DNA of 63,990 nt, the filler included, from Octopus bimaculoides (lineage: Eukaryota): assembly GCF_001194135.2 (NCBI RefSeq). It is 10 parts of 10 records of this genome, joined end to end, with 100 filler letters (N's around TTAATTAATTAA, not from the genome) between each part and the next. Parts side by side here need not be neighbours in the genome. Positions count along the whole stretch, not along the records: positions 43,554 to 54,117 come from NC_068988.1; 9 more parts are not named here. The stretch is one strand, 5' to 3'. The notes under the pieces are model-generated. The model made no database searches. It saw nothing but the letters and a program-made list of their open reading frames with translations, and was not told the DNA's origin. Made by a program: the position numbers and the translations under genes. Below are positions 5,920-54,821 of this stretch, piece by piece (position 1 is the stretch's first letter; each line of letters begins with the position of its first letter).

Positions 5920-6144
5920 AGGTGTCTTGTGCTTGTTTCAGTCATTAGATTGCGGCCCTGCTGCAGCACGACTTAGAAGAATTTTTAGTCGAACGTATCG
6001 ATCCCAGTACTCACTTTTTTTTTTATAAGCCTGGAACTTATTCTATCGGGCCCTTTTACCGAACCGCTAAGTTACGGAGACGTAAACACACCAGCACCGG
6101 TTATCAAGTGGTAGTGGGGTCAGAATTACAGACACAAAGTGAGA

Positions 6145-16227: not shown

Positions 16228-17667
16228 CATTACGCTTCGTGCAAATTTATAATTCATCGCTCTCTAAAGCTATTATAACTGCGTTCCACCCATGCCACTA
16301 CTGGTGATATCATCAAATTTTGAATTTATCCACATATGNNNNNNNNNNNNNNNNNNNNNNNNNNNNNNNNNNNNNNNNNNNNNNNNNNNNNNNNNNNNNN
16401 NNNNNNNNNNNNNNNNNNNNNNNNNNNNNNNNNNNNNNNNNNNNNNNNNNNNNNNNNNNNNNNNNNNNNNNNNNNNNNNNNNNNNNNNNNNNNNNNNNNN
16501 NNNNNNNNNNNNNNNNNNNNNNNNNNNNNNNNNNNNNNNNNNNNNNNNNNNNNNNNNNNNNNNNNNNNNNNNNNNNNNNNNNNNNNNNNNNNNNNNNNNN
16601 NNNNNNNNNNNNNNNNNNNNNNNNNNNNNNNNNNNNNNNNNNNNNNNNNNNNNNNNNNNNNNNNNNNNNNNNNNNNNNNNNNNNNNNNNNNNNNNNNNNN
16701 NNNNNNNNNNNNNNNNNNNNNNNNNNNNNNNNNNNNNNNNNNNNNNNNNNNNNNNNNNNNNNNNNNNNNNNNNNNNNNNNNNNNNNNNNNNNNNNNNNNN
16801 NNNNNNNNNNNNNNNNNNNNNNNNNNNNNNNNNNNNNNNNNNNNNNNNNNNNNNNNNNNNNNNNNNNNNNNNNNNNNNNNNNNNNNNNNNNNNNNNNNNN
16901 NNNNNNNNNNNNNNNNNNNNNNNNNNNNNNNNNNNNNNNNNNNNNNNNNNNNNNNNNNNNNNNNNNNNNNNNNNNNNNNNNNNNNNNNNNNNNNNNNNNN
17001 NNNNNNNNNNNNNNNNNNNNNNNNNNNNNNNNNNNNNNNNNNNNNNNNNNNNNNNNNNNNNNNNNNNNNNNNNNNNNNNNNNNNNNNNNNNNNNNNNNNN
17101 NNNNNNNNNNNNNNNNNNNNNNNNNNNNNNNNNNNNNNNNNNNNNNNNNNNNNNNNNNNNNNNNNNNNNNNCCCCCCCCCCCAGTATCTCCAGCTACCCG
17201 TATGGCTTCTTCCAAGTGATTTGTATGTTTGTCTATCTACCTAGATTCTCTATAAAACTAATCTGAAAATAAAACAAGTTTTTATTGATGAGTCCGTGGG
17301 CGAAACAAAATTATTAACTGTTGGACTCATAATAATGGATTAAACGAGTCAACACTTGTAATTTGAATTCTTTATTTTAAGTAGCCTGACCATATTCTAT
17401 AAAATCGTCATCACCAGAAATACTCTAACATTCACTCAAGCACGCACCCCAACACACGTGCGCATTCACAGACGTACGCATTCACACATACGCATATGTA
17501 ATGTATATGCGCATGCTCGGCAGTGTGGCGCTTCCCCGTCCCACCACCAAACATAGCGTCAATTATGCGAACTTACCATGAATGTCATGATAATGTTACA
17601 TAACCCTGTCTTCCCTCGCAGCTGAAACTTTGGTAAAAACAGTGCACTGGCACTCACACACACACAA

Positions 17668-43553: not shown

Positions 43554-44445
43554 GTCGACGAGGAATACCTGACCCGCCTGTTCAGGACGACTTTCGGGCC
43601 GGGACCTATGGACAACTTCCAGAGATCCCTGGCCTGGCAGTGTTACCGAGAGGCGCTACCCGTTCGGGATAAGCTCTATAGACACGGCTCGCGAAATGCG
43701 GGGCCGACCTGCTCGAGATGCGTTCATAGCGATGAAACCGTTCTGCACGCATTCGTGCAGTGTCCAACCATTTCGGAGCTGTGGGCTTATGTCGAACGAC
43801 TGCTGTCACGTGTGGGACGAGTCGGTTTATCAACCGAGTCTATCGTCAATATCGTCACGTCACGCTCCTTCCTTTAAACGGGAAGGAAGAGCTGTATTTA
43901 TCGTACTTGTAGCTATGGCGAAAGAGTGCATCTGGTGGACGCGTCTGAAAGGATTAGAGACAAATACTTTCCTCTCTGGTCAATCTCTCATCAACTTTTT
44001 CAAGTATCACTTGAAAAGGAAGGTGAGAGTAGAGAGGCAAGTGTTGTCTAGCAAAAGTTTCGATAAAAGATGGATACATGTAGCAAGAATGGCACGTATA
44101 ATTGACGAAGCCACCTTGACCATGATTCTATAAAACGTTTTAAAATTTTGTAAAGAGATTTACTTATGTTTCTTGCATAAATAAAAGGAATTTTATTTAA
44201 TAAACTGTGACACTAAGGACCGAGGTTACCGTGGTCTTTTCGTAGGTTTTTCTTTCCACGGATAACCTCCCCATTTATTGGGAATTTTCTGTATTATTTC
44301 GTATTTTGTGTAAATACCCCAAACGTTTTGCGATGTATTTTTTTTCATCGTTGTCCCCACTTTTGTTTTTTTTTTCTGCTTTGTTTTCGCCCCCCTCGAA
44401 AAGAAAGACTCTATGTTGAGCCCTGTGTGACTAATAAAGAAACAT
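43554..44445 (+). mobile_element. L1/Tx1-like LINE 3' end (ORF2 C-terminal zinc-binding region, 3' UTR, AATAAA)
   Basis: SLAWQCYREALPVRDKLYRHG...CSRCVHSDETVLHAFVQCP (zf-RVT-like), continuing by frameshift into AMAKECIWWTR; AATAAA near 44433, then a (TATC)n tract. Confidence 0.85.
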
Positions 44446-44761
44446 ATCTATCTTTCTATCTATCAATTAATCTATCTATCTATCCATCCATCTATCTATC
44501 TATCTATCTCTATGCATGCGTGTTTAAGCACATGTGTGTGTGTGAGCGAGCATGTGTGTGTATGCATGTATATACAATCTAATTCAATAGGTGCATACAC
44601 ATAGATACGTATATACGTAACACGTAAATACACACATACATGTGCTTAAACACGCATACATACAGATCGGTAGATAGATAGATAGTCAGACAAACAGATA
44701 GCTAGACAGTCAGACTGGCAGATAGAGAGACAGACAGACAAACAGATACACACACACACAC

Positions 44762-44801
<40 letters not shown>

Positions 44802-45629
44802 NNNNNNNNNNNNNNNNNNNNNNNNNNNNNNNNNNNNNNNNNNNNNNNNNNNNNNNNNNNNNNNNNNNNNNNNNNNNNNNNNNNNNNNNNNNNNNNNNNN
44901 NNNNNNNNNNNNNNNNNNNNNNNNNNNNNNNNNNNNNNNNNNNNNNNNNNNNNNNNNNNNNNNNNNNNNNNNNNNNNNNNNNNNNNNNNNNNNNNNNNNN
45001 NNNNNNNNNNNNNNNNNNNNNNNNNNNNNNNNNNNNNNNNNNNNNNNNNNNNNNNNNNNNNNNNNNNNNNNNNNNNNNNNNNNNNNNNNNNNNNNNNNNN
45101 NNNNNNNNNNNNNNNNNNNNNNNNNNNNNNNNNNNNNNNNNNNNNNNNNNNNNNNNNNNNNNNNNNNNNNNNNNNNNNNNNNNNNNNNNNNNNNNNNNNN
45201 NNNNNNNNNNNNNNNNNNNNNNNNNNNNNNNNNNNNNNNNNNNNNNNNNNNNNNNNNNNNNNNNNNNNNNNNNNNNNNNNNNNNNNNNNNNNNNNNNNNN
45301 NNNNNNNNNNNNNNNNNNNNNNNNNNNNNNNNNNNNNNNNNNNNNNNNNNNNNNNNNNNNNNNNNNNNNNNNNNNNNNNNNNNNNNNNNNNNNNNNNNNN
45401 NNNNNNNNNNNNNNNNNNNNNNNNNNNNNNNNNNNNNNNNNNNNNNNNNNNNNNNNNNNNNNNNNNNNNNNNNNNNNNNNNNNNNNNNNNNNNNNNNNNN
45501 NNNNNNNNNNNNNNNNNNNNNNNNNNNNNNNNNNNNNNNNNNNNNNNNNNNNNNNNNNNNNNNNNNNNNNNNNNNNNNNNNNNNNNNNNNNNNNNNNNNN
45601 NNNNNNNNNNNNNNNNNNNNNNNNNNNNN

Positions 45630-45659
<30 letters not shown>

Positions 45660-45663
<4 letters not shown>

Positions 45664-45818
45664 GACGGACTTCTTTCAGTTTCCGTCTACCAAATTCACT
45701 CAAAAAGCTCTGCTTGGCTCGAGGCAATAGTAGAAGACACTTGTCCAACGTGTCATACAGTGGGACTGAACCATGTGGTTAGTAAGCAAGCTACTTACCA
45801 CACAGTCACTCCTGTGCC

Positions 45819-45820
<2 letters not shown>
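45660..45820 (-). mobile_element. SINE family 1 head
   Basis: Reverse-complement head motif next to (TA)n and a gap. Confidence 0.75.
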
Positions 45821-45849
<29 letters not shown>

Positions 45850-46465
45850 ATATGTACGTATGTATATAGTTTGTGGCTCCACTTTGTTACGATCAACAAA
45901 AACAGTATCCCATCCTGTGTGTGATAACTTTCGTTATTAAGATGACCTAGTAATAGTTTGCTGTTACGACAATACTTGATTTTGCAGGTTTTTATGAGGT
46001 GTTTTATAAGGTTTTTTTTATAAGACACAAGAAGCATTATAAAAATATGCGTTGCTGCGTGTCTTCGCAGCAAGAAACTACACGTTCAACAGGAAACTGC
46101 AAGAAACTAGATCTTTATACTGTGTGGCGAGATTTTTCATCTGTCTTCCTTTTCTATTGGGATTTCCTCTATCCCCTGTTCCTGAAGAAGAGCTTTGCTC
46201 GAAACGTAAAAACACTTTTCTTTCCTTCCCTGAGCGTCTGCTAATACTTTGCATGTACCACGTCCTCACGTAGTTTTTCTTTTTTTTTTTTTTGATTTAC
46301 TGTATATATGTGTATATGTGTGTGTGTCTGTGTTTGTGTGTGTGCCTGTGTATATGTGAGTGTGTGTGTTTTGTGCATGCGTGTATATATATATATATTT
46401 GTACGCACAAACATATGATATATATATACATACATACAGTTATTGCATAAAAATGGAATTTTCAC

Positions 46466-46558
46466 CTCGATAATGATATACTTAAGATTACCCAATCCAT
46501 ACGCACAGATGTCGAATAATGAACAAAAATGATAAAAATTGATTGGTGTTATGTACTC
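46466..46558 (-). CDS. Candidate penultimate exon of GRL copy A (loop 3 / TM7a)
   Basis: Acceptor tcctataacAG, 93 nt open in phase 0-0 (EYITPINFYHFCSLFDICAYGLGNLKYIIIE), weak donor GAG|GTGAAA. ICAYGLGNL resembles the GR-type hTAxGhFxh segment. Confidence 0.3.
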
Positions 46559-46974
46559 CTGTTATAGGACATATATTATGTATGAAAAANNNNNNNNNNN
46601 NNNNNNNNNNNNNNNNNNNNNNNNNNNNNNNNNNNNNNNNNNNNNNNNNNNNNNNNNNNNNNNNNNNNNNNNNNNNNNNNNNNNNNNNNTATATATATAT
46701 ATATAATCGTATGTGTGTGTGTGTATATATAGATACATGAATGTAAGAGCACATGTAACAACACCCAGACCGTATCGCATTAAGGAAACAGCCCGTGTAT
46801 TCACCTATCTTGATCTTCATTCTTGCCATTGTTAGAAATGGTTATTGACAATATTGTCATACTCTTGAATATACCGAGGGTTCAATGTTACCTCGGCTGA
46901 TATTGATGACAAATATCACAAAAAAAAAAGAGGACAATACTATTTGCTGGCATCTCGCTCGTAATAGTAGAATA

Positions 46975-47105
46975 CATTCAGCATATTAAAAGGGTTGTGG
47001 AATTGACGAAATATAATGATCTGAAACTGGAGATAACTACAATGTGGAAATAGAAAACAGATGAAATTGTCGTAATAAATGGTGCTTTTGGAATAAAAAT
47101 GAAAA
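46975..47105 (+). mobile_element. R4/Dong-like endonuclease C-terminal fragment, antisense within the presumed first intron of GRL copy A
   Basis: ELTKYNDLKLEITTMWK*KTDEIVVINGAFGIK resembles KxxKYxDLxxEhxxhW...IPhhhGALG. Confidence 0.6.
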
Positions 47106-47386
47106 CATGTAGGAATATACATGACCACAACCACATCACGTACATATGTGCATAACTCACAGACAATGAAATTTGTTGGTACCGTGCTCATAATTGTAGC
47201 ATTCATTCAGCATAGTAAAATTGATAATTCCAGGAAGTAATACTTCACATAAAAGATGAGAAGCTGAACTATATCTCTGAGCTAAAAATATTCTACAAAC
47301 CCACCGAAAACGCTGAAAATGTGTTTACTACATAAAAGACAATGGATATCAGTTTGAAAATAAGAAACGTATATTATGAAACTCAC

Positions 47387-48364
47387 CGATCTGTTTAAAC
47401 GAACTCCGAACCAAAGCAATGAAATCCAACAGAAGAAACTTTCCAACGTCATCATTAAAACGTAACCAGATATATACGGGCTTGTATTGAAAGCATTATT
47501 TATTATTCCATAAGTTGAAATACAAATGCTGATGAGACTACCAAGTACGACAAGTACTGAAGTAAGACTCAATGTTTCATTTACTGATTTCAGTATTGTA
47601 CTCAGGGTATCATGATTTTTAATTATATCTGTAATTAGTCCTCGATTTTTGATAACAAACGAAATGTCGGATTGCTGTTCCTTAACGTAAATTTGAGCTT
47701 CGTTCGCCACTTTGTTAAACTCATAAATAAGTGCAATTTCGGTTATAATGTTAATATACACATCAAGAAATAACGATATCAATGAAAGGGCATTAAAGAA
47801 AATACTTATTGTAAAATATGGTATGATATATGCACTGTTGTTTTGTAGAGGATATGTAAGAAAATGCAGTATATCGCCATTGAAAACAGTAAAAATGATT
47901 TCGAAAAGTATGTTTGAAACTATAGTTGTAAGTAAAAATATTGATAAGGAAATATAAGAATATATTAATTTAGAGTCATAGAATTTTCTGTCTTCTTCTT
48001 CAATATTAACTTTGGCAAATGATTCCAATAGTTCATTGTCGTTAGAATGCCCGAAGAGTTTAAGAAAACTAAGGACAGCAATGAAGCTCCGAAAAAATAA
48101 TATATATACATATGTTAATATTTGAATGGGGGTTAAATTTTTCAGTTGCATCAAACAAATAACATAGCGAATAGGATTTACAATTAAATGTATGGAGAGT
48201 AGAATATATAACACTTGTAAACAAATTCTTTGAACATCAAGTGTTTTCAGCAAGGAGATATTAATACGGGCTTTCGCGAAATTATTAAATTTTTGATGAA
48301 ATTCCAAGACTTTAAAGAACTGCATTTCTTTAATATTCACGCTTTTTCTAACTTTGAATTCCAT
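47387..48364 (-). CDS. Gustatory-receptor-like (GRL / 7tm_7-type) membrane protein, copy A, long coding exon (TM1-TM6); C-terminal exons lie downstream
   Basis: 326 open codons from ATG at 48364 to ...WFGVRLNRS, then a phase-0 donor TCG|GTGAGT (intron starts 47386). Six hydrophobic segments, a long polar loop after TM4 (EFNKVANEAQ...), and NHDTLSTILKSVNETLS before TM5, resembling the GR/GRL H-x-x-L...N motif. About 40% identical to the paralogue at 52542-53537. Family assignment is by pattern recognition only. Confidence 0.75.
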
Positions 48365-49424
48365 TTAAAAGATTTTTGTGTCCACTTTCAAAATCTAAGA
48401 GATTAATCAGGTAATGTACCGAAAACTTTCAGCGTGTTACTTGATTTAATTTTCTATCAGACTTCTGTTATATATATATATATATNNNNNNNNNNNNNNN
48501 NNNNNNNNNNNNNNNNNNNNNNNNNNNNNNNNNNNNNNNNNNNNNNNNNNNNNNNNNNNNNNNNNNNNNNNNNNNNNNNNNNNNNNNNNNNNNNNNNNNN
48601 NNNNNNNNNNNNNNNNNNNNNNNNNNNNNNNNNNNNNNNNNNNNNNNNNNNNNNNNNNNNNNNNNNNNNNNNNNNNNNNNNNNNNNNNNNNNNNNNNNNN
48701 NNNNNNNNNNNNNNNNNNNNNNNNNNNNNNNNNNNNNNNNNNNNNNNNNNNNNNNNNNNNNNNNNNNNNNNNNNNNNNNNNNNNNNNNNNNNNNNNNNNN
48801 NNNNNNNNNNNNNNNNNNNNNNNNNNNNNNNNNNNNNNNNNNNNNNNNNNNNNNNNNNNNNNNNNNNNNNNNNNNNNNNNNNNNNNNNNNNNNNNNNNNN
48901 NNNNNNNNNNNNNNNNNNNNNNNNNNNNNNNNNNNNNNNNNNNNNNNNNNNNNNNNNNNNNNNNNNNNNNNNNNNNNNNNNNNNNNNNNNNNNNNNNNNN
49001 NNNNNNNNNNNNNNNNNNNNNNNNNNNNNNNNNNNNNNNNNNNNNNNNNNNNNNNNNNNNNNNNNNNNNNNNNNNNNNNNNNNNNNNNNNNNNNNNNNNN
49101 NNNNNNNNNNNNNNNNNNNNNNNNNNNNNNNNNNNNNNNNNNNNNNNNNNNNNNNNNNNNNNNNNNNNNNNNNNNNNNNNNNNNNATATATATATATATA
49201 TATATACATTTAATGTAAATGGGGGTATTAATCAATATCATCCTACACAATTAATTATTAACAGGAGTGGTTTTTGTTTGCTTTGTATGAAGTATTAGTT
49301 CTTCATATATCTGAGGGTATTGTTTGAATAAAGGGACTCCGAAATATAACTCCAATTCTTCCTTTATATTCATTCGAAGACACACACATACATACAAACA
49401 TATATATAGTCATTTATTCTCTTA

Positions 49425-49790
49425 TTTATTTCAGTCAATTGACTGCGGCCATGGTGGAGCACCGCCTTTACTTGAGCAAATCATCGACCCCAGGACTTAT
49501 TCTTTGTAAGCCTACTCCTTATTCTATCGATCGTCCTCTTTTGCCGAACCGCAAAGTTACGGGGGCATAAACACGCCAGCATCGATTGTCAAACGATGTT
49601 GTGGGGACAAACACAGACACACAAACATATACTTCTTTCAGTTTCCGTCTACCAAATCCAATCACAAGGTTTTGGGCGGCCCGAGTCTATAGTAGAAGAC
49701 ACTTGCCGAAGGTGCCACGCACTGGGACTGAACCCGGAACCATGTGCTTGGTAAGCAAGCTATTTACACCACATCAACTCCTGCGCCTAT
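49425..49790 (-). mobile_element. Composite SINE family 1 copy
   Basis: Reverse complement of head and tail motifs. Confidence 0.8.
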
Positions 49791-49977
49791 GTATACATAT
49801 GACTGTGTGTGTGTGCGTGCGTGGCGTGTGTGTGTATGATCCCTTTATATGATATCTATACAAATATATACTTATACATATGCAAACGTATATATACACA
49901 TACACACATACATATATATACATATATATGTATGTATATATATATATATGTGTGTGTATATATATATATATATATAT

Positions 49978-50023
<46 letters not shown>

Positions 50024-50044
50024 GCGTGTATATACTATGTATAT

Positions 50045-50520
50045 ATATGGAAAATACCAAGTACTTCTCTGCAAGCATACGAAACTGAATGTAATGCAGA
50101 CGAGATACGCTGGGCCAGAATGGATTGCGACCGATGAATCAGAATTCCTTCGTTACCTCGGTACTGACTTGAGTAATGATAGATCCTTCCAGATGCATAC
50201 TGCTAGGTTGGCAATAACATGCAGACAGCTCGCTAGATTGATCCTTAGAATTTACAGAACGAGAGGCCAGGAACCCATGACGAATGTCTTGAGGAAACGT
50301 GTTCTGCGTCACTTAGACTACAGCTCTAAACTGCGGCCTCCAAACAGTGCAAAATTAAGTGCAGAACTCGAAACCATCGAGCGAAGCTATACAGTGAAGA
50401 TCGTCGCAATGCGAATGACCACTTTCTGGGAAACGCTGAAAGAGTTAAGACTCTGCTCCCTAGAACGAATTCGCTAAAGATATACAGAGATACAGATATG
50501 AAAAACGCTGCAAGTCTTAT
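50045..50520 (+). mobile_element. CR1/L2-type LINE RT C-terminal fragment
   Basis: LRYLGTDLSNDRSF...ILRIYRTR...LDYSSKLRPP...LETIERSYT...FWETLKELRLCSLERIR. Confidence 0.7.
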
Positions 50521-50706
50521 ACAAACTTTTAGCATTCAGCTAACGCTGAAATGTTTGGTTACAATACATTTTCAGGAAGCATATTTCATTGGAAGCAATT
50601 AGTCTAATTCGAAAACTTGAAAATAAACAGTCTAAGGGAAGTAAATATAATACCCCACTCTTTTTCTGTAAAATAAAAATGAAAAAAGTTAGGTTTCTTT
50701 AATAAT

Positions 50707-50790
50707 AAATCTCTTCATAAATCGCATAATTCTCTTCATAAATAGCATAAATCTCTTCATAAATAGCATAAATCTCTTCATAAATCGCAT
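50707..50790. repeat. 21-bp tandem repeat (AAATCTCTTCATAAATAGCAT) x4
   Basis: Seen directly, abutting the Penelope-like remnant. Confidence 0.85.
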
Positions 50791-50799
50791 AGTAAAAAT

Positions 50800-51430
50800 A
50801 TCTGGCTGATTATTTCATACGGAAAACAAGCTATCGAAAGGACCTTTTCCAAAACTTCCAGGTACCACCCCATTTTAAACACAATACCCACCGCATCAGA
50901 ATTGTCTTTTCTAACACCAATAATTCCCTACAGATTATATTATTGCGTAGCAACTATATTCTTAAAGGTAAAAGGTTTCACTTAATAACTGTAGTAACGT
51001 TAATAATAATAGCGGTAATCTCTCCTTAAATAATTGTATCAATAGTAATAGTCCTTCTAATTGTGGTCCGAATAAAACTTGTGTTCTCAACGGAAATTGC
51101 AGAATTACAAAGGCTGTTAACCAATGCAAAATTAACCCTGGATCTAAAGAACTCTTTTATATTGGACTTGCTTCTACGGAATTGAAACGGCGTATCGCGA
51201 ATATATGTTTTCACATTTAAATACAGTGATAAATGTAATTCTACAGGTCTTAGTAAACTAATTTGGCATCTCAAAGGTTCTAATAAACAATTTTCTTTAC
51301 ATTGGACACTTTTTTCGAAATCCTTTCCCTATGATAAAGGAAAATCCTTTTGTCCTCTTTGTACGGACGAACAACTCTTTATCATCTTTTCCAAACATAC
51401 ACTGATTAACACCTATAAAGAACGTGTTTA
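50800..51430 (+). mobile_element. Degenerate Penelope-like element GIY-YIG region
   Basis: Frameshifted CGPNKTCVLNGNC...FYIGLASTELKRRIAN/...NSTGLSKLIWHLK...LHW...CPLCTDEQLFI...LIN, matching the CPLxGxC...YIG...STxLSKxIW...CxLCxxEK pattern. Confidence 0.75.
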
Positions 51431-51878
51431 CGGGTGTTTACGTTGGAGAAAACACTCTTTCAGCTATTTCAAATAATATCTACCCCTTACCCAATAATAT
51501 CTGCCACTTAATCTTTATTCTTACTTCCCATACCTCCTATACTTTCCTTCACCTTTTCTTTCCATCTATCATTATTCCTTATTTGCTTATATCTCCATTT
51601 CTCCTTTAATTCTCTTTCTCTCTTCTTTTTCTTCCTCTCACGCCCTATGACGTCAAATTTCTTAACTGCAATTTTAAAATTTCTAGCGCTCCTTATACCA
51701 CTTTGCTTTCCATATATGTATATGCGTGTATATATGTATATGTGCATTCTTGTATATGCATGTATATATGTATATGTGTGCATGTATGCATGCGTGCATG
51801 CATGTATTTATATGTATACATATGCATGTATATAAAATTATAATTAAGGGTGTCTAAAAGATAGCTTCATGCTAGATA

Positions 51879-51963
51879 TATTCATACAGCACCAGGAGAG
51901 AAGACAAAGCGACAAAATAGTTTATTTTGTCTCTTTGTCTTCTCTCCTGGTGCTGTATGAATA
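51879..51963. repeat. Near-perfect 41-bp inverted repeat with a 3-nt loop, nested in a larger foldback repeat (51847-52025)
   Basis: 51879-51919 pairs with 51923-51963 with one mismatch (51910/51932). Outer arms AGGGT...CATGCTAGATATA and TATATCTAGCATGG...ACCCT. Confidence 0.9.
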
Positions 51964-52541
51964 CTTGATGTGGTTTTAGAGTCAAGTTTTGGCTGCTATA
52001 TCTAGCATGGTTGTATCTTTTACCCTACCGGTCACATATTGCTGTTGATGTGTTCGACTGTTGCGTCTCCTCAATAAGCTGCTGACTTTCTACTTAAATT
52101 ACAAGCAAGTGTTACAGACAATTAAAATGTTTTTTCTCTTTATTTCCATAGGTTTTTTTCTAGTTTACAGTGGATATCCTGGATGACTTTAGCTAACCCA
52201 CCAAAGTTTCTATAAGAACAGGACGTTATCTTGCTTACCAACCACATTAAAACTCACCTTCTTCAGAGAAATAGTCTCTATGTGTGTTTCTGCGAAGCAC
52301 ATTCTCATTGGAAAAAAAAAAGAAAAGCCGAGGCATGATTTCATTATTTCATTGGTAATTTATTTATCGATTCCTGGATAATGACATTCAATGTTGATTT
52401 CGTTGCGATTTTAAGATAAAGTGTCTGTGACTGAATCGATAATACTAAGCATACTATCCATCGCCTTCTGAGATGTTACTGCTTCTAGATTTCTTATAGG
52501 GATATGTAAGGATGGATATGTAAATATTTTATAACACTTAC

Positions 52542-53537
52542 CGATCTGTTTAGATAAAATCCACAGCAAAGCATGACAATCAAAGCAAATAGGCAGCCGG
52601 ACGCCAAGAATAATGCGTAGATGTGTATATGCGAATTAATTTGGAATGAATCCTCTATTATTCCATAAGCGGCAATAGAGCAGCTAATAAAACTGCCAAG
52701 GACAATAAATCCTGAAATAATTTTGAATGAATCATTTTCTAATTTCAGGATTATAATCAAGGTGTCATGAGTGTTATATATTCTTATAATTTGTCTGTGT
52801 TTGTTGAAAACTTTTGAATTAGCTGATTGAGTTTCCTTTACAAAACGGTCAGCCTTATTCGCTACTTTGTTAAACTCATGAGTAAGTGCAATCCCAGTTA
52901 TAAGATCTATGTACAAATCAAGTAATACGGACAGAAGTGACATGCAGTTTAACACAACCTGGATTGTGAAAAATAGGATTTTATAACTATTATTGTTAGA
53001 TACAGGAAATATGAAGAACAACAGCAACTCTTGACTTATAAGCGGTAATACCACCTCCAAAATTACGCAAATTATCATAGTCAAAGTTAAAAATATACAT
53101 AAAGTTATATATGAATATATAAAGTTTTTGTTATAGAATTTGCAATCTTCATCTTCAATTTTAATTTGGGCAAACGTTTAGATTAGTTCTTGGTGTTTAG
53201 AATTTCGTAAAAGCTTCAACAAAGACAGGAAAGGAAGCACTGGTAAAAAAATTATTTGAATATACACAAATATTTCATCAGTTTTTAAAGTGCGCCTGTC
53301 CATAAAATATGCAATGTGTCGAATAGGGTCCACAATGAAATATATACAGAGCAGTAAATAAAATATTTGCGAAGAAATTATTTTAAAATTTAATGATTTG
53401 AGTGATGATATGTTGAAATTTACTTTCTTAAAATTATTGCATCTTTGATAGAATTTCAGAATTTCAAAAAACTTCGTTTCTTTTAATGTCATGTTTTTTA
53501 AAGTTCCAGCTTCTTCACAAGTTATTTGTGTATCCAT
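52542..53537 (-). pseudogene. Gustatory-receptor-like paralogue, copy B, long exon with one in-frame premature stop
   Basis: Track ORFs 53178..53537 and 52494..53084 are in one frame, separated only by TAA at 53178-53180 (ELI*TFAQIKIEDEDCKFY versus ELLESFAKVNIEEEDRKFY in copy A). 332 codons end ...GFYLNRS with a phase-0 donor TCG|GTAAGT at the same position as in copy A. Confidence 0.75.
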
Positions 53538-53944
53538 CTTTAAAACAAAACGTATAAACCACGTTATCTCTAATTATTTGTCAATTTCTTAGTTATTCTA
53601 ATTATTTGTGGAACATATTTCTGTGAAAATCATTAAAAAATATGCGATAAACGATATGTAATCCAGGGGAAGGATTTCCTGTTCCCATGTATTTAAATAA
53701 GTCATATCAGTTTCACGCTCTGTCATAGAGCAGAATCAATCCAATTTTGACTAGAATTAATCCAGCAGAGAAAATGCGCAATATCTAATGTTTACAAAGT
53801 GGGCAGTAATATGAAAATAATAATGTCTGCAAATGTGTCTATGTAATTAGGGATAATGCATTAACAAATTACGTATGAAGAGTATCTCATGAATTACTAT
53901 GCGTTATGATTAAGTAATTGTCATTGTTCATATCTAAAGCAAAC

Positions 53945-54088
53945 AGCTATGATGTTTCGAGACCACATGATTCAGGGTTCAGTCCCATTGCGTGGCACCT
54001 TGGGTAACTGTCTTCTGCTATAGCTTCGGGTCGCCCAAGGGTTTGTGAATGAATTTGATAGACGGAATCTGAAAGATGACCGTCGTGT
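53945..54088 (+). mobile_element. SINE family 1 head
   Basis: GGGTTCAGTCCCATTGCGTGGCACCTTGGG...CTGAAAGATGACCGTCG. Confidence 0.75.
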
Positions 54089-54821
54089 ATACATAAGCAT
54101 ATATATATATATATATANNNNNNNNNNNNNNNNNNNNNNNNNNNNNNNNNNNNNNNNNNNNTTAATTAATTAANNNNNNNNNNNNNNNNNNNNNNNNNNN
54201 NNNNNNNNNNNNNNNNNTATATATATACGTATATATATATATATATGTATATATATGTGTGTGAGTGTATGATGTTTATCATACATGTATACACACACAC
54301 ACACACATATATCATATTATGTTATATTATAAAGTGTTGAAAAATGCTAGTTACTACTGAACATTTCTCGCATCCAATCAATCACGTCAAGTGAGTTTTC
54401 ACATGAGAGTACAATTCAGAATAGAAGGAATAACAGCAACATTTATTGGTAGAATTTTAATCGATTTGCAGAACCATGCACCATACATTATATTGGTGAA
54501 TAGAGCGTAAGGGTTTGAAAAGAAGGGGAGAATAAATCTTTTTGTCATGAACGAATCGTTAAGAACTGAATAAAATTGAAGTGTCTGGAGAATGTGCTGA
54601 AACCTAATTAGACGAAGCTCTGTAAAACAATGGCTACATGATATTTAGACAAAGAAGATCATATACCCTGATTCCTACTATTCGTGATGTTTAGTCTGCA
54701 GCAGTTGTCTTACGGGTGTGCATTGTTAACTTTTTTTTCATAATTTTTATGAACAAGAGATTGACACACGCAGCCGTTGTGGCGGTGGTATCACAATCAG
54801 TGGAAGTAAGATCTATCGGCT

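What the first reader, a model, noticed from the sequence alone, without database searches (positions are those of the whole stretch)
47387..53537. Tandem pair of insect-gustatory-receptor-like (GRL/7TM ion channel) genes in a probable octopus genome
Seen: two minus-strand paralogues about 4.2 kb apart, each with one exon of about 330 codons. They align almost without gaps (one 1-aa indel, about 40% identity by my manual count), carry six hydrophobic helices, share EFNKVAN after TM4 and HDTL-x-x-ILK-x-x-N before TM5, and end identically LNRS|GT at a phase-0 donor. Established knowledge: insect Grs and animal GRLs (Pfam 7tm_7) have this helix layout, the H..L...N motif before TM5 and phase-0 introns clustered at the C-terminus, and they work as ligand-gated cation channels. 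The chemoreceptors characterised in octopus suckers are instead nicotinic-receptor-derived. Inference: this is a locally duplicated, fast-evolving GRL cluster, possibly a second, little-studied cephalopod chemosensory channel family. The TM7 TYhhhhhQF motif was not found, so the assignment is not closed.
Basis: partly seen in the sequence, partly recalled or inferred. Interest (0 to 1): 0.85.

Follow-up and report, generated by a model that had tools for sequence, protein, structure and literature searches.

The report
Octopus-type gustatory-receptor-like exon array
The two reading frames are real members of the animal gustatory-receptor-like (insect-taste-receptor-type) ion channel family. 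They are most likely two alternative first exons of one complex gene, one of them carrying a premature stop, rather than two complete genes.

Summary
Two minus-strand paralogous reading frames are present as described. Exon A (47387-48364) has 326 intact codons. Exon B (52542-53537) has 332 codons. They share 42% identity with one gap, and both end LNRS|GTRAGT in phase 0. The N gap (48486-49185) lies between the exons, 121 nt upstream of A's ATG, with (TA)n on both sides; it interrupts no reading frame.

The family assignment holds. The closest relatives are uncharacterised Octopus sinensis and O. bimaculoides proteins. Several of these pass Pfam 7tm_7, carry TYILVVIQ in TM7, and have three 3' phase-0 introns. 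Their models match only insect OR/Orco/Gr structures.

"Tandem genes" is probably wrong. No TM7 exon lies in the piece. In O. sinensis, at least six such long exons sit 4-15 kb apart, and annotated isoforms splice different ones onto the same three short 3' exons, as in insect Gr28b/Gr39a loci.

A and B are not sister copies, so a recent, fast-evolving duplication is not supported. The species was not identified. A chemosensory function is inferred, not shown.

The parts
47387..48364 (-). Exon A: an intact long first exon of 326 codons. It encodes an N-terminal helix plus TM1-TM6 of a GRL / seven-transmembrane ion channel protein. It has its own ATG at 48364-48362, with TAA directly upstream at 48367-48365.
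   Evidence: Best database identity is 44%. The AF2 model of this exon is low confidence (pLDDT 55); its top seven Foldseek hits are all insect OR/Orco.
47381..47386 (-). Phase-0 splice donor GTGAGT, directly after ...RLNRS of exon A.
   Evidence: The donor is at the same position and phase as in O. sinensis exon 1 of P0001.
52542..53537 (-). Exon B: a paralogous long first exon of 332 codons with its own ATG at 53537. It is interrupted by one in-frame stop, so it is a candidate pseudo-exon, null allele or base-call error.
53178..53180 (-). In-frame TAA at codon 120 of exon B. Most relatives, including exon A (GAA), have Glu here. Exon B has no frameshift and only a 1-aa indel relative to A.
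52536..52541 (-). Phase-0 splice donor GTAAGT after ...YLNRS of exon B. The first 13 intron bases (GTAAGTGTTATAA) are identical to those after O. sinensis exons V3 and V4.
48486..49185 (.). Assembly gap of 700 N (estimated length), with (TA)n on both flanks. It lies between the exons, 121 nt upstream of A's ATG, and is not inside any coding frame.
48365..52541 (-). Interval between B's donor and A's ATG. It contains no TM7 or constant-exon coding sequence, so a transcript starting at B must splice past A to obtain a TM7.
   Evidence: tblastn at E<=10 with all family C-termini; six-frame motif scan.
43554..47386 (-). The 3.8 kb downstream of exon A, including N gaps at 44802-45629 and 46590-46689. 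No constant exons were found here; they are presumed to lie beyond the piece edge or in the gaps.

Best explanation
The piece holds two members of a tandem array of alternative long first exons from a cephalopod gustatory-receptor-like (GRL, Pfam 7tm_7, seven-transmembrane ion channel) locus.

Each exon has its own ATG. Each encodes the N-terminal helix and TM1-TM6, which in solved insect OR/Gr structures is the part that forms the ligand pocket. Each ends at the same phase-0 donor, LNRS|GTRAGT.

Inferred: a transcript starts at one such exon, presumably from its own promoter, and splices over any downstream sister exons. It joins three short shared 3' exons that lie outside this piece. Those exons encode the cytoplasmic TM7a and the pore-lining TM7b, with the TYhhhhhQ motif.

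One locus would therefore produce several receptor subunits with different sensing halves and a common pore helix. By homology these would assemble as tetrameric ligand-gated cation channels.

Exon A looks functional. Exon B carries a premature TAA and is a pseudo-exon, a null allele or a sequencing error.

Shown: the exons, their donors, the stop codon, family membership by sequence and fold, and the shared-exon architecture in O. sinensis gene models.

Inferred: that the same architecture applies to this window, promoter choice, channel function, and any chemosensory role.
For: 1. Family membership.
- An A2 profile that includes both window exons finds only 32 proteins among 1.84 billion. 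Among them are O. sinensis LOC118764606 (E 4e-12) and gastropod proteins.
- These hits score 31.7-79.4 bits on 7tm_7, against a gathering score of 26.6. Cluster mates are named 'gustatory receptor for sugar taste 61a/64a-like'.
- Close relatives P0007 and P0009 also pass the 7tm_7 gathering score.
- A profile of the long exons alone still reaches LOC118764606 at E 1.7e-4 over its whole TM1-6 region.
- The only PDB sequence hit is DmGr43a, and it is weak (E 2.9).

2. Fold.
- The AF2 model of the 43%-identical P0001 has pLDDT 70 and pTM 0.69. Its top 20 Foldseek hits are all insect OR/Orco/Gr, with probability 1.00 and TM-score 0.41-0.58. ABC transporters and GPCRs follow at TM-score below 0.25.
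- The model of exon A alone gives the same result but is low confidence.

3. Topology.
- K+R counts are 9, 4 and 6 on the predicted inside loops and 1, 0 and 0 on the outside loops. Predicted inside loops are long (37 and 56 aa) and outside loops short (9-13 aa).

4. Architecture.
- In O. sinensis the P0001 gene spans 39.6 kb. Exon 1 (...LNRS|GTAAGT) skips three intact sister exons to join exons of 23, 30 and 18 codons. All introns are phase 0.
- P0016 joins a different long exon to the identical 3' exons.
- LOC118764607 isoforms X2, X3 and X4 likewise differ at the N-terminus and share the C-terminus.
- Exon spacing there is 4-15 kb, against 5.2 kb start to start in the window.

5. The window itself has no TM7 exon between B and A or downstream of A.

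6. The same arrangement is described for insect Gr/Or loci: long first exons, three shared short exons, three ancestral phase-0 introns, and some pseudogenic isoform exons (PMC6175461, PMC3011837).
Against: - The shared 3' exons were not found in this piece, so the splicing model for this locus rests on analogy with a paralogous or orthologous locus in another genome.
- 1628 nt of the piece are N and could hide short exons.
- The O. sinensis isoforms are computational RefSeq models, and I could not inspect their transcript support.
- The window exons alone give no Pfam hit, and the exon-A structure model is low confidence.
- No conserved promoter element was found upstream of the long exons.
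- The octopus TM7 motif ends in T, not F/L/M.
- Adjacency of A and B depends on a scaffold join across the gap.
- No expression or functional data exist for any member.
Confidence: 0.7

Rival explanations
1. One reading: two independent, complete tandem GRL genes, each with its own downstream TM7 exons that were simply not recognised.
For: Each exon has its own ATG and donor. 700 nt between them and 928 nt downstream of A are unread. O. sinensis also has separate neighbouring loci (LOC118764606, 607, 608), each with its own 3' exons.
Against: The constant exons are the best conserved part of the family. They are about 80-100% identical between loci and species, and short as they are they gave tblastn E 1e-4 to 7e-15 in L001. 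Nothing comparable turns up in the 3.5 kb of read sequence between B and A or in the read sequence downstream of A. In O. sinensis the three constant exons span 2.9 kb, which does not fit a 700-nt gap.
Confidence: 0.17
2. A decayed remnant: both exons are non-functional relics of a dead GRL cluster. They have no usable 3' exons and are no longer expressed.
For: Exon B has a premature stop. No database protein is more than 45% identical to either exon, so no annotated or sampled product includes them. The surroundings are rich in retroelement fragments and microsatellites.
Against: Exon A keeps 326 open codons in 33% G+C DNA (chance about 3e-11). It also keeps all the family-conserved residues and a consensus donor. 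Exon B has a single substitution-type defect and no frameshift.
Confidence: 0.08
3. A scaffolding artefact: A and B are not neighbours in the genome, and the (TA)n-flanked gap joins two unrelated contigs.
For: The gap has an estimated length and microsatellite flanks on both sides.
Against: Same-strand sister exons about 4-6 kb apart are exactly what the chromosome-level O. sinensis assembly shows.
Confidence: 0.05

Closest known systems
Octopus sinensis LOC118764608 (P0001 isoform X1; P0016) and LOC118764607; O. bimaculoides LOC106880719. All are annotated 'uncharacterized protein'.
   Same: Same subfamily: 42-45% identity over the whole long exon. The ATG context is the same, as are EFNKVA, HDTL and LNRS|GT, and the exon spacing is similar.
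   Different: No orthologue of A or B was found; both are separate old lineages. The window lacks the 3' exons seen in those loci.
Insect alternatively spliced Gr/Or loci (Drosophila Gr28b, Gr39a, Gr23a; Blattella Gr60a-m)
   Same: Tandem long first exons encode the N-terminus up to TM6. They are alternatively spliced to three short shared exons across three phase-0 introns, and some isoform exons are pseudogenic (PMC6175461, PMC3011837).
   Different: The host is a mollusc, and sequence identity to insect Grs is only about 10-14%. Introns are far larger, up to 36 kb in O. sinensis. The TM7 motif ends QT rather than QF. No transcript or functional evidence is available here.
Molluscan GRLs (Haliotis and Littorina proteins named 'gustatory receptor for sugar taste 61a/64a-like'; GRLs reported in Lottia, Crassostrea and Aplysia by Robertson 2015, as cited in PMC7746228)
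   Same: Same superfamily. They are reached by the octopus profile at E 1e-9 to 3e-6 and score strongly on 7tm_7 and Trehalose_recp. They share the C-terminal signature ...G(I/Y)xVxG...TYhhhhhQ.
   Different: About 15-20% identity. The octopus group forms its own tight clade of only about 15 representatives at 50% clustering.
Octopus chemotactile receptors (CRs, nicotinic-receptor-derived pentameric channels)
   Same: Only the proposed role, as a candidate sensory ligand-gated channel family in octopus.
   Different: An unrelated fold and family. No Cys-loop or neurotransmitter-gated channel match was seen in any search.

Membership tests
GRL / insect chemoreceptor superfamily (Pfam 7tm_7 PF08395; seven-transmembrane ion channels) | Significant sequence similarity to recognised members | tested here: met
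   The window exons alone give no Pfam hit at E<=10. A profile containing them reaches 7tm_7-positive proteins: P0021 at E 4e-12, P0024 at 1e-9, P0025 at 6e-9 and P0028 at 3e-6 in a 1.84-billion library. Their 7tm_7 scores are 31.7-79.4 bits against a gathering score of 26.6. A profile of the long exons alone reaches P0021 at E 1.7e-4. Close relatives P0007 and P0009 pass the gathering score.
GRL / insect chemoreceptor superfamily (Pfam 7tm_7 PF08395; seven-transmembrane ion channels) | Seven transmembrane helices, protein about 350-500 aa | tested here: inconclusive
   The window exons encode six hydrophobic segments in 326 and 332 aa. The seventh is on exons not present in the piece. The full-length relative P0001 has 389 aa and seven TM helices.
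GRL / insect chemoreceptor superfamily (Pfam 7tm_7 PF08395; seven-transmembrane ion channels) | Intracellular N-terminus (opposite to GPCRs) and intracellular loops longer than extracellular ones | tested here: met
   This is a positive-inside count only, not a dedicated predictor. K+R is 9 (N-terminus), 4 (TM2-3) and 6 (TM4-5), against 1, 0 and 0 in the other loops. Loop lengths are 37 and 56 aa against 9, 11 and 13 aa.
GRL / insect chemoreceptor superfamily (Pfam 7tm_7 PF08395; seven-transmembrane ion channels) | TM7 motif (T/S)Yhhhhh(Q/K/E)(F/L/M) (PMC7746228) | tested here: inconclusive
   The motif is absent from the piece on both strands. It is present in the shared last exon of relatives as TYILVVIQT, matching 3 of 4 motif positions. 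More distant mollusc relatives have TY...QF.
GRL / insect chemoreceptor superfamily (Pfam 7tm_7 PF08395; seven-transmembrane ion channels) | Three phase-0 introns clustered near the 3' end | tested here: met
   The first of the three is present in both window exons, as a phase-0 GTRAGT donor after LNRS. All three were mapped as phase 0 in O. sinensis P0001. The other two cannot be seen in the window.
GRL / insect chemoreceptor superfamily (Pfam 7tm_7 PF08395; seven-transmembrane ion channels) | Orco/OR/Gr-type fold (N-terminal helix S0; long S4-S6 reaching into the cytoplasm; split S7) | tested here: met
   For the P0001 model, the top 20 PDB hits are all insect OR/Orco/Gr, with probability 1.00 and TM-score 0.41-0.58; the next folds score below 0.25. 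For the exon A model (pLDDT 55, low), the top seven hits are all OR/Orco with query-normalised TM-score 0.48-0.62.
GRL / insect chemoreceptor superfamily (Pfam 7tm_7 PF08395; seven-transmembrane ion channels) | Tetrameric ligand-gated cation channel activity | not testable with these tools
   This needs multimer modelling, electrophysiology or cryo-EM.
Alternatively spliced Gr-type locus (Gr28b/Gr39a architecture) | Tandem same-strand long first exons, each with its own start codon and the same phase-0 donor | tested here: met
   The window has exons A and B. O. sinensis L001 has at least six, one of them truncated.
Alternatively spliced Gr-type locus (Gr28b/Gr39a architecture) | Short 3' exons shared by all first exons | tested here: inconclusive
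   They are not in the piece. Sharing is shown for O. sinensis gene models: P0001 and P0016 use different long exons and identical 3' exons.
Alternatively spliced Gr-type locus (Gr28b/Gr39a architecture) | Transcripts that join each first exon to the shared exons | not testable with these tools
   No transcript data are available here. The window's ORFs are not on record in the assembly index.
G-protein-coupled receptors | GPCR fold and extracellular N-terminus | tested here: not met
   GPCR structures score TM 0.11-0.14 and probability at most 0.14. The charge distribution predicts an intracellular N-terminus.

The most novel reading that the evidence does not exclude
Octopods may build a sizeable, so far undescribed repertoire of insect-type seven-transmembrane ion channel receptors. 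Several neighbouring loci would each carry an array of alternative first exons joined to a common pore-forming C-terminus. The repertoire would act as a second chemosensory or other sensory channel family alongside the nicotinic-derived chemotactile receptors. The variable-exon architecture shared with insect Gr/Or genes would then be either ancestral to protostome GR/GRL genes or a striking convergence.
Probability: 0.3. Interest if true: 0.7.

Novelty: new member of a known kind. Interest (0 to 1): 0.5.

Why it matters
GRLs are known in molluscs but essentially uncharacterised outside arthropods and nematodes. I found no paper in the searchable library describing them in cephalopods. Octopus chemosensation is currently explained by nicotinic-derived receptors.

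A cluster of GRL loci that multiplies receptor variants through alternative first exons gives a concrete, testable second candidate family. It also extends the insect Gr28b/Gr39a gene architecture to Lophotrochozoa.

For annotation, it warns that such long exons should not be called as separate or truncated genes. Many, including these two, are missing from current protein sets.

Tried and rejected
- Pfam on the two window exons alone found nothing, even at E<=10. The 7tm_7 signal sits mainly in the C-terminal exons, so ORFs of relatives that cover only the long exon also fail.
- Searches for TM7 or constant exons in the piece found nothing. I used tblastn with word size 2 at E<=100, a six-frame [STA][YF]x5Q scan and all family proteins at E<=10.
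- Exact look-ups of the window ORFs in the assembly index returned no record. P0004 and P0005 are also not on record.
The species remains unknown.
- A search for shared promoter k-mers upstream of the long exons (window plus O. sinensis) found none shared by four or more regions.
- Rfam on the piece found nothing.
- The AF2 model of exon A alone is low confidence (pLDDT 55), so it is used only as supporting evidence.
- The PDB sequence-profile search gave only DmGr43a at E 2.9, which is not significant on its own.
- Two literature searches were badly specified and uninformative.
- I rejected GPCR, ABC-transporter and Cys-loop channel readings.
- I did not attempt dN/dS between A and B, because synonymous sites are saturated at 42% protein identity.

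Full report
**What is in the sequence**

The usable piece is 43554-54117, with N runs at 44802-45629, 46590-46689 and 48486-49185.

On the minus strand there are two long reading frames.
- Exon A starts at ATG 48364, with a TAA codon immediately upstream. It stays open for 326 codons to ...GVRLNRS at 47387, followed by GTGAGT.
- Exon B starts at ATG 53537 and reaches ...GFYLNRS at 52542 after 332 codons, followed by GTAAGT.
- BLASTP of A against B gives 42% identity and 63% positives over 320 residues, with one gap, E 6e-78.
- Both contain EFNKVAN and HDTL-xx-ILK-xx-N, and each has six hydrophobic segments.
- At this base composition (33% G+C) the chance of 326 open codons is about 3e-11. 200 shuffles never gave more than 155.

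Exon B has an in-frame TAA at 53178-53180 (codon 120: ELI*TFAQ). Exon A has GAA (ELLESFAK) there, and most relatives also have Glu. There are no frameshifts. The defect is a single stop codon at a position that is Glu (GAA) in exon A. It could be a young pseudo-exon, a null allele or a base-call error.

**The gap**

The gap 48486-49185 lies 121 nt upstream of A's ATG, in the interval between the two exons. It has (TA)n on both flanks. No reading frame crosses it, so the frame-continuity question does not arise for the coding parts. What does depend on the gap is the adjacency, orientation and 4.2-kb spacing of the two exons. A's 5' flank is also lost.

**Family**

Neither exon alone hits any Pfam model.

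The word-indexed protein search found only three relatives. The best named one is Octopus sinensis LOC118764608 isoform X1 (P0001, 389 aa, 43% identity). After LNRS it continues VHSITQSIHYMQFQGVDQEVVAK / ILVFLNRLTTESHGIDVGGCFVITPSSTLT / MIGSFITYILVVIQTKPL.

A profile search added O. bimaculoides LOC106880719 and three isoforms of O. sinensis LOC118764607. On Pfam 7tm_7 (gathering score 26.6 bits):
- P0007 scores 30.3 bits.
- P0009 scores 27.4 bits, aligned to model positions 165-367 of 370.
- P0004 scores 25.1 bits.

An exhaustive HMMER search of 1.84 billion representatives, using a profile that includes both window exons, found only 32 proteins at E<=1e-3.
- 15 are close, at E<=1e-30.
- The distant ones include O. 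sinensis LOC118764606 (P0021, E 4e-12, 7tm_7 31.7 bits).
- They also include Haliotis and Littorina proteins scoring 40-79 bits on 7tm_7 and hitting Trehalose_recp. Their cluster mates are named 'gustatory receptor for sugar taste 61a/64a-like'.

A profile built only from the long exons (TM1-6) still matches P0021 over its whole N-terminal 315 residues, at E 1.7e-4 scaled to the full library. The window part itself, not just the C-terminus of its relatives, is therefore homologous to a 7tm_7 protein. The only PDB sequence hit is Drosophila Gr43a at a non-significant E of 2.9, with TY...IQ aligned to TYLVILIQF.

**Fold and topology**

The AlphaFold2 model of P0001 has pLDDT 69.8 and pTM 0.69, with a poorly modelled C-terminus. 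It shows an N-terminal helix, very long helices 4-6 and a split last helix.
- Foldseek against the PDB returned, as its first 20 hits, only insect OR, Orco and Gr structures (8z9a, 8jm9, 8v3c/d, 8v02, 6c70, 8vc2, 7lic and others). Probability was 0.99-1.00 and TM-score 0.41-0.58.
- ABC transporters and GPCRs follow at TM-score below 0.25 and probability below 0.3.
- The model of exon A alone is low confidence (pLDDT 55). It nevertheless has OR/Orco structures as its top seven hits, with query-normalised TM-score 0.48-0.62.

K+R counts are 9 (N-terminus), 4 (TM2-3 loop) and 6 (TM4-5 loop), against 1, 0 and 0 in the alternate loops. The corresponding loop lengths are 37 and 56 aa against 9-13 aa. 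This fits an intracellular N-terminus and long intracellular loops, the criteria listed for GRLs in PMC7746228.

**Genes or exons**

No sequence encoding the family's C-terminus occurs anywhere in the piece on either strand. These short exons are the best conserved part of the family and were readily detected across loci in O. sinensis.

The O. sinensis locus explains this.
- The P0001 gene spans 39.6 kb.
- Its first exon (L001 10001-10954...LNRS|GTAAGT) is joined to exons at 46673-46741, 47649-47738 and 49533-49589. All three introns are phase 0.
- The first intron contains three more intact sister exons, at 16398, 27576 and 42321. Two more lie upstream, at 1457 and at 6109; the latter is truncated in a (TA)n run.
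- Each intact sister exon has its own ATG just after an in-frame stop and ends LN(R/K/T)S|GTRAGT.
- Protein P0016 is exactly the 27576 exon spliced to the same three 3' exons.
- LOC118764607 isoforms X2, X3 and X4 likewise differ in the long exon and share the C-terminus.
- Sister-exon spacing there is 4-15 kb, against 5.2 kb start to start in the window.

This is the arrangement described for insect Gr and Or loci. [quoted passage not shown]

The most economical reading is that A and B are two variable first exons of one such locus, with the constant exons lying beyond the piece. B, which has no TM7 exon before A, must splice past A if it is used at all. This step is inference by analogy. I rate it about 0.7.

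**Evolution**

In a neighbour-joining tree of long exons, A and B are not sisters.
- All pairwise identities within the octopus group are 35-45%, except for a few closer pairs.
- O. bimaculoides and O. sinensis orthologues are 86% identical.
- The A/B split is therefore much older than the O. bimaculoides-O. sinensis split, and 'recent, fast-evolving local duplication' is not supported.
- No protein in either database is more than 45% identical to A or B. These exons are unannotated or from an unsampled species.

Every named close relative is an Octopus protein, which makes an octopod origin likely. I could not identify the species; the retroelement query found nothing.

**Mechanism**

In solved insect OR/Gr structures, TM1-6 build the ligand pocket and TM7b lines the pore of a tetrameric cation channel. 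This is established knowledge (Butterwick 2018; del Marmol 2021; the Gr43a and Gr9 structures listed).

Alternative first exons would then give subunits with different sensing domains and a common pore and anchor helix. The octopus motif ends QT, where Orco has the gate residue (PMC7746228). That could alter permeation.

Channel activity, ligand class and tissue are untested. GRLs elsewhere also serve light, heat and developmental roles, so 'chemoreceptor' is only the leading guess.

**Verdict**

The finding is real and correctly placed in its family, but its gene structure was mis-read.
- It is a new, unannotated member of a known family, with a known type of locus architecture, in a lineage where that family has not been studied.
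- Interest is moderate, at 0.5.

Noticed in passing
window 43608-44133 (+): A fragment of a non-LTR retrotransposon. The ORF at 43608-43877 hits Pfam zf-RVT (36.9 bits) and continues in another frame to 44133, so it is frameshifted. G+C is 51%, against about 30% elsewhere in the piece.
   Followed up: partly
window 50100-50477 (+): An ORF with a reverse-transcriptase-C-terminus-like look (LRYLGTDLSNDRSF...). It has no Pfam hit and no hit in the 5.8-billion protein search, so it is probably a degraded repeat.
   Followed up: partly
window 44762-44801, 45630-45662, 48470-48485, 49186-49205: The two larger assembly gaps are bounded by (TA)n/(AT)n microsatellites on both sides. This suggests the assembler broke at long TA repeats. 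Other microsatellites and a 21-bp tandem repeat (50705-50791, 4 copies, 93% matches) are scattered through the piece.
   Followed up: partly
window 52529-52541 (-); L001 10955-10967 and 17355-17367: The first 13 intron bases after exon B (GTAAGTGTTATAA) are identical to those after O. sinensis exons V3 and V4, although the proteins are only about 42% identical. Exon A has GTGAGTTTCATAA. This could be a conserved splicing element or could be chance beyond the donor consensus.
   Followed up: no
L001 6109-6571: One O. sinensis sister exon is truncated after about 128 codons, where it runs into a (TA)n repeat. It is a pseudo-exon or an assembly collapse, and parallels the defective exon B in the window.
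   Followed up: partly
O. sinensis chromosome CM016866.1 (L001 and neighbours): Three consecutively numbered loci (LOC118764606, 607 and 608) all encode GRLs. 607 and 608 have nearly identical but separate constant exons (about 80% identity by tblastn). Another long exon starts at L001 59371, after the 608 constant exons.
   Followed up: partly
P0019 (from the representatives library): A 360-aa predicted protein combines an unrelated N-terminal part with two long-exon fragments in swapped order. It is probably a mis-assembled or rearranged copy.
   Followed up: no
window 53538-53552 (-): Directly upstream of exon B's ATG is tttgttttaaAG, a possible weak 3' splice acceptor. Exon A has no AG there (...cttttaa|ATG). 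It may be chance.
   Followed up: no
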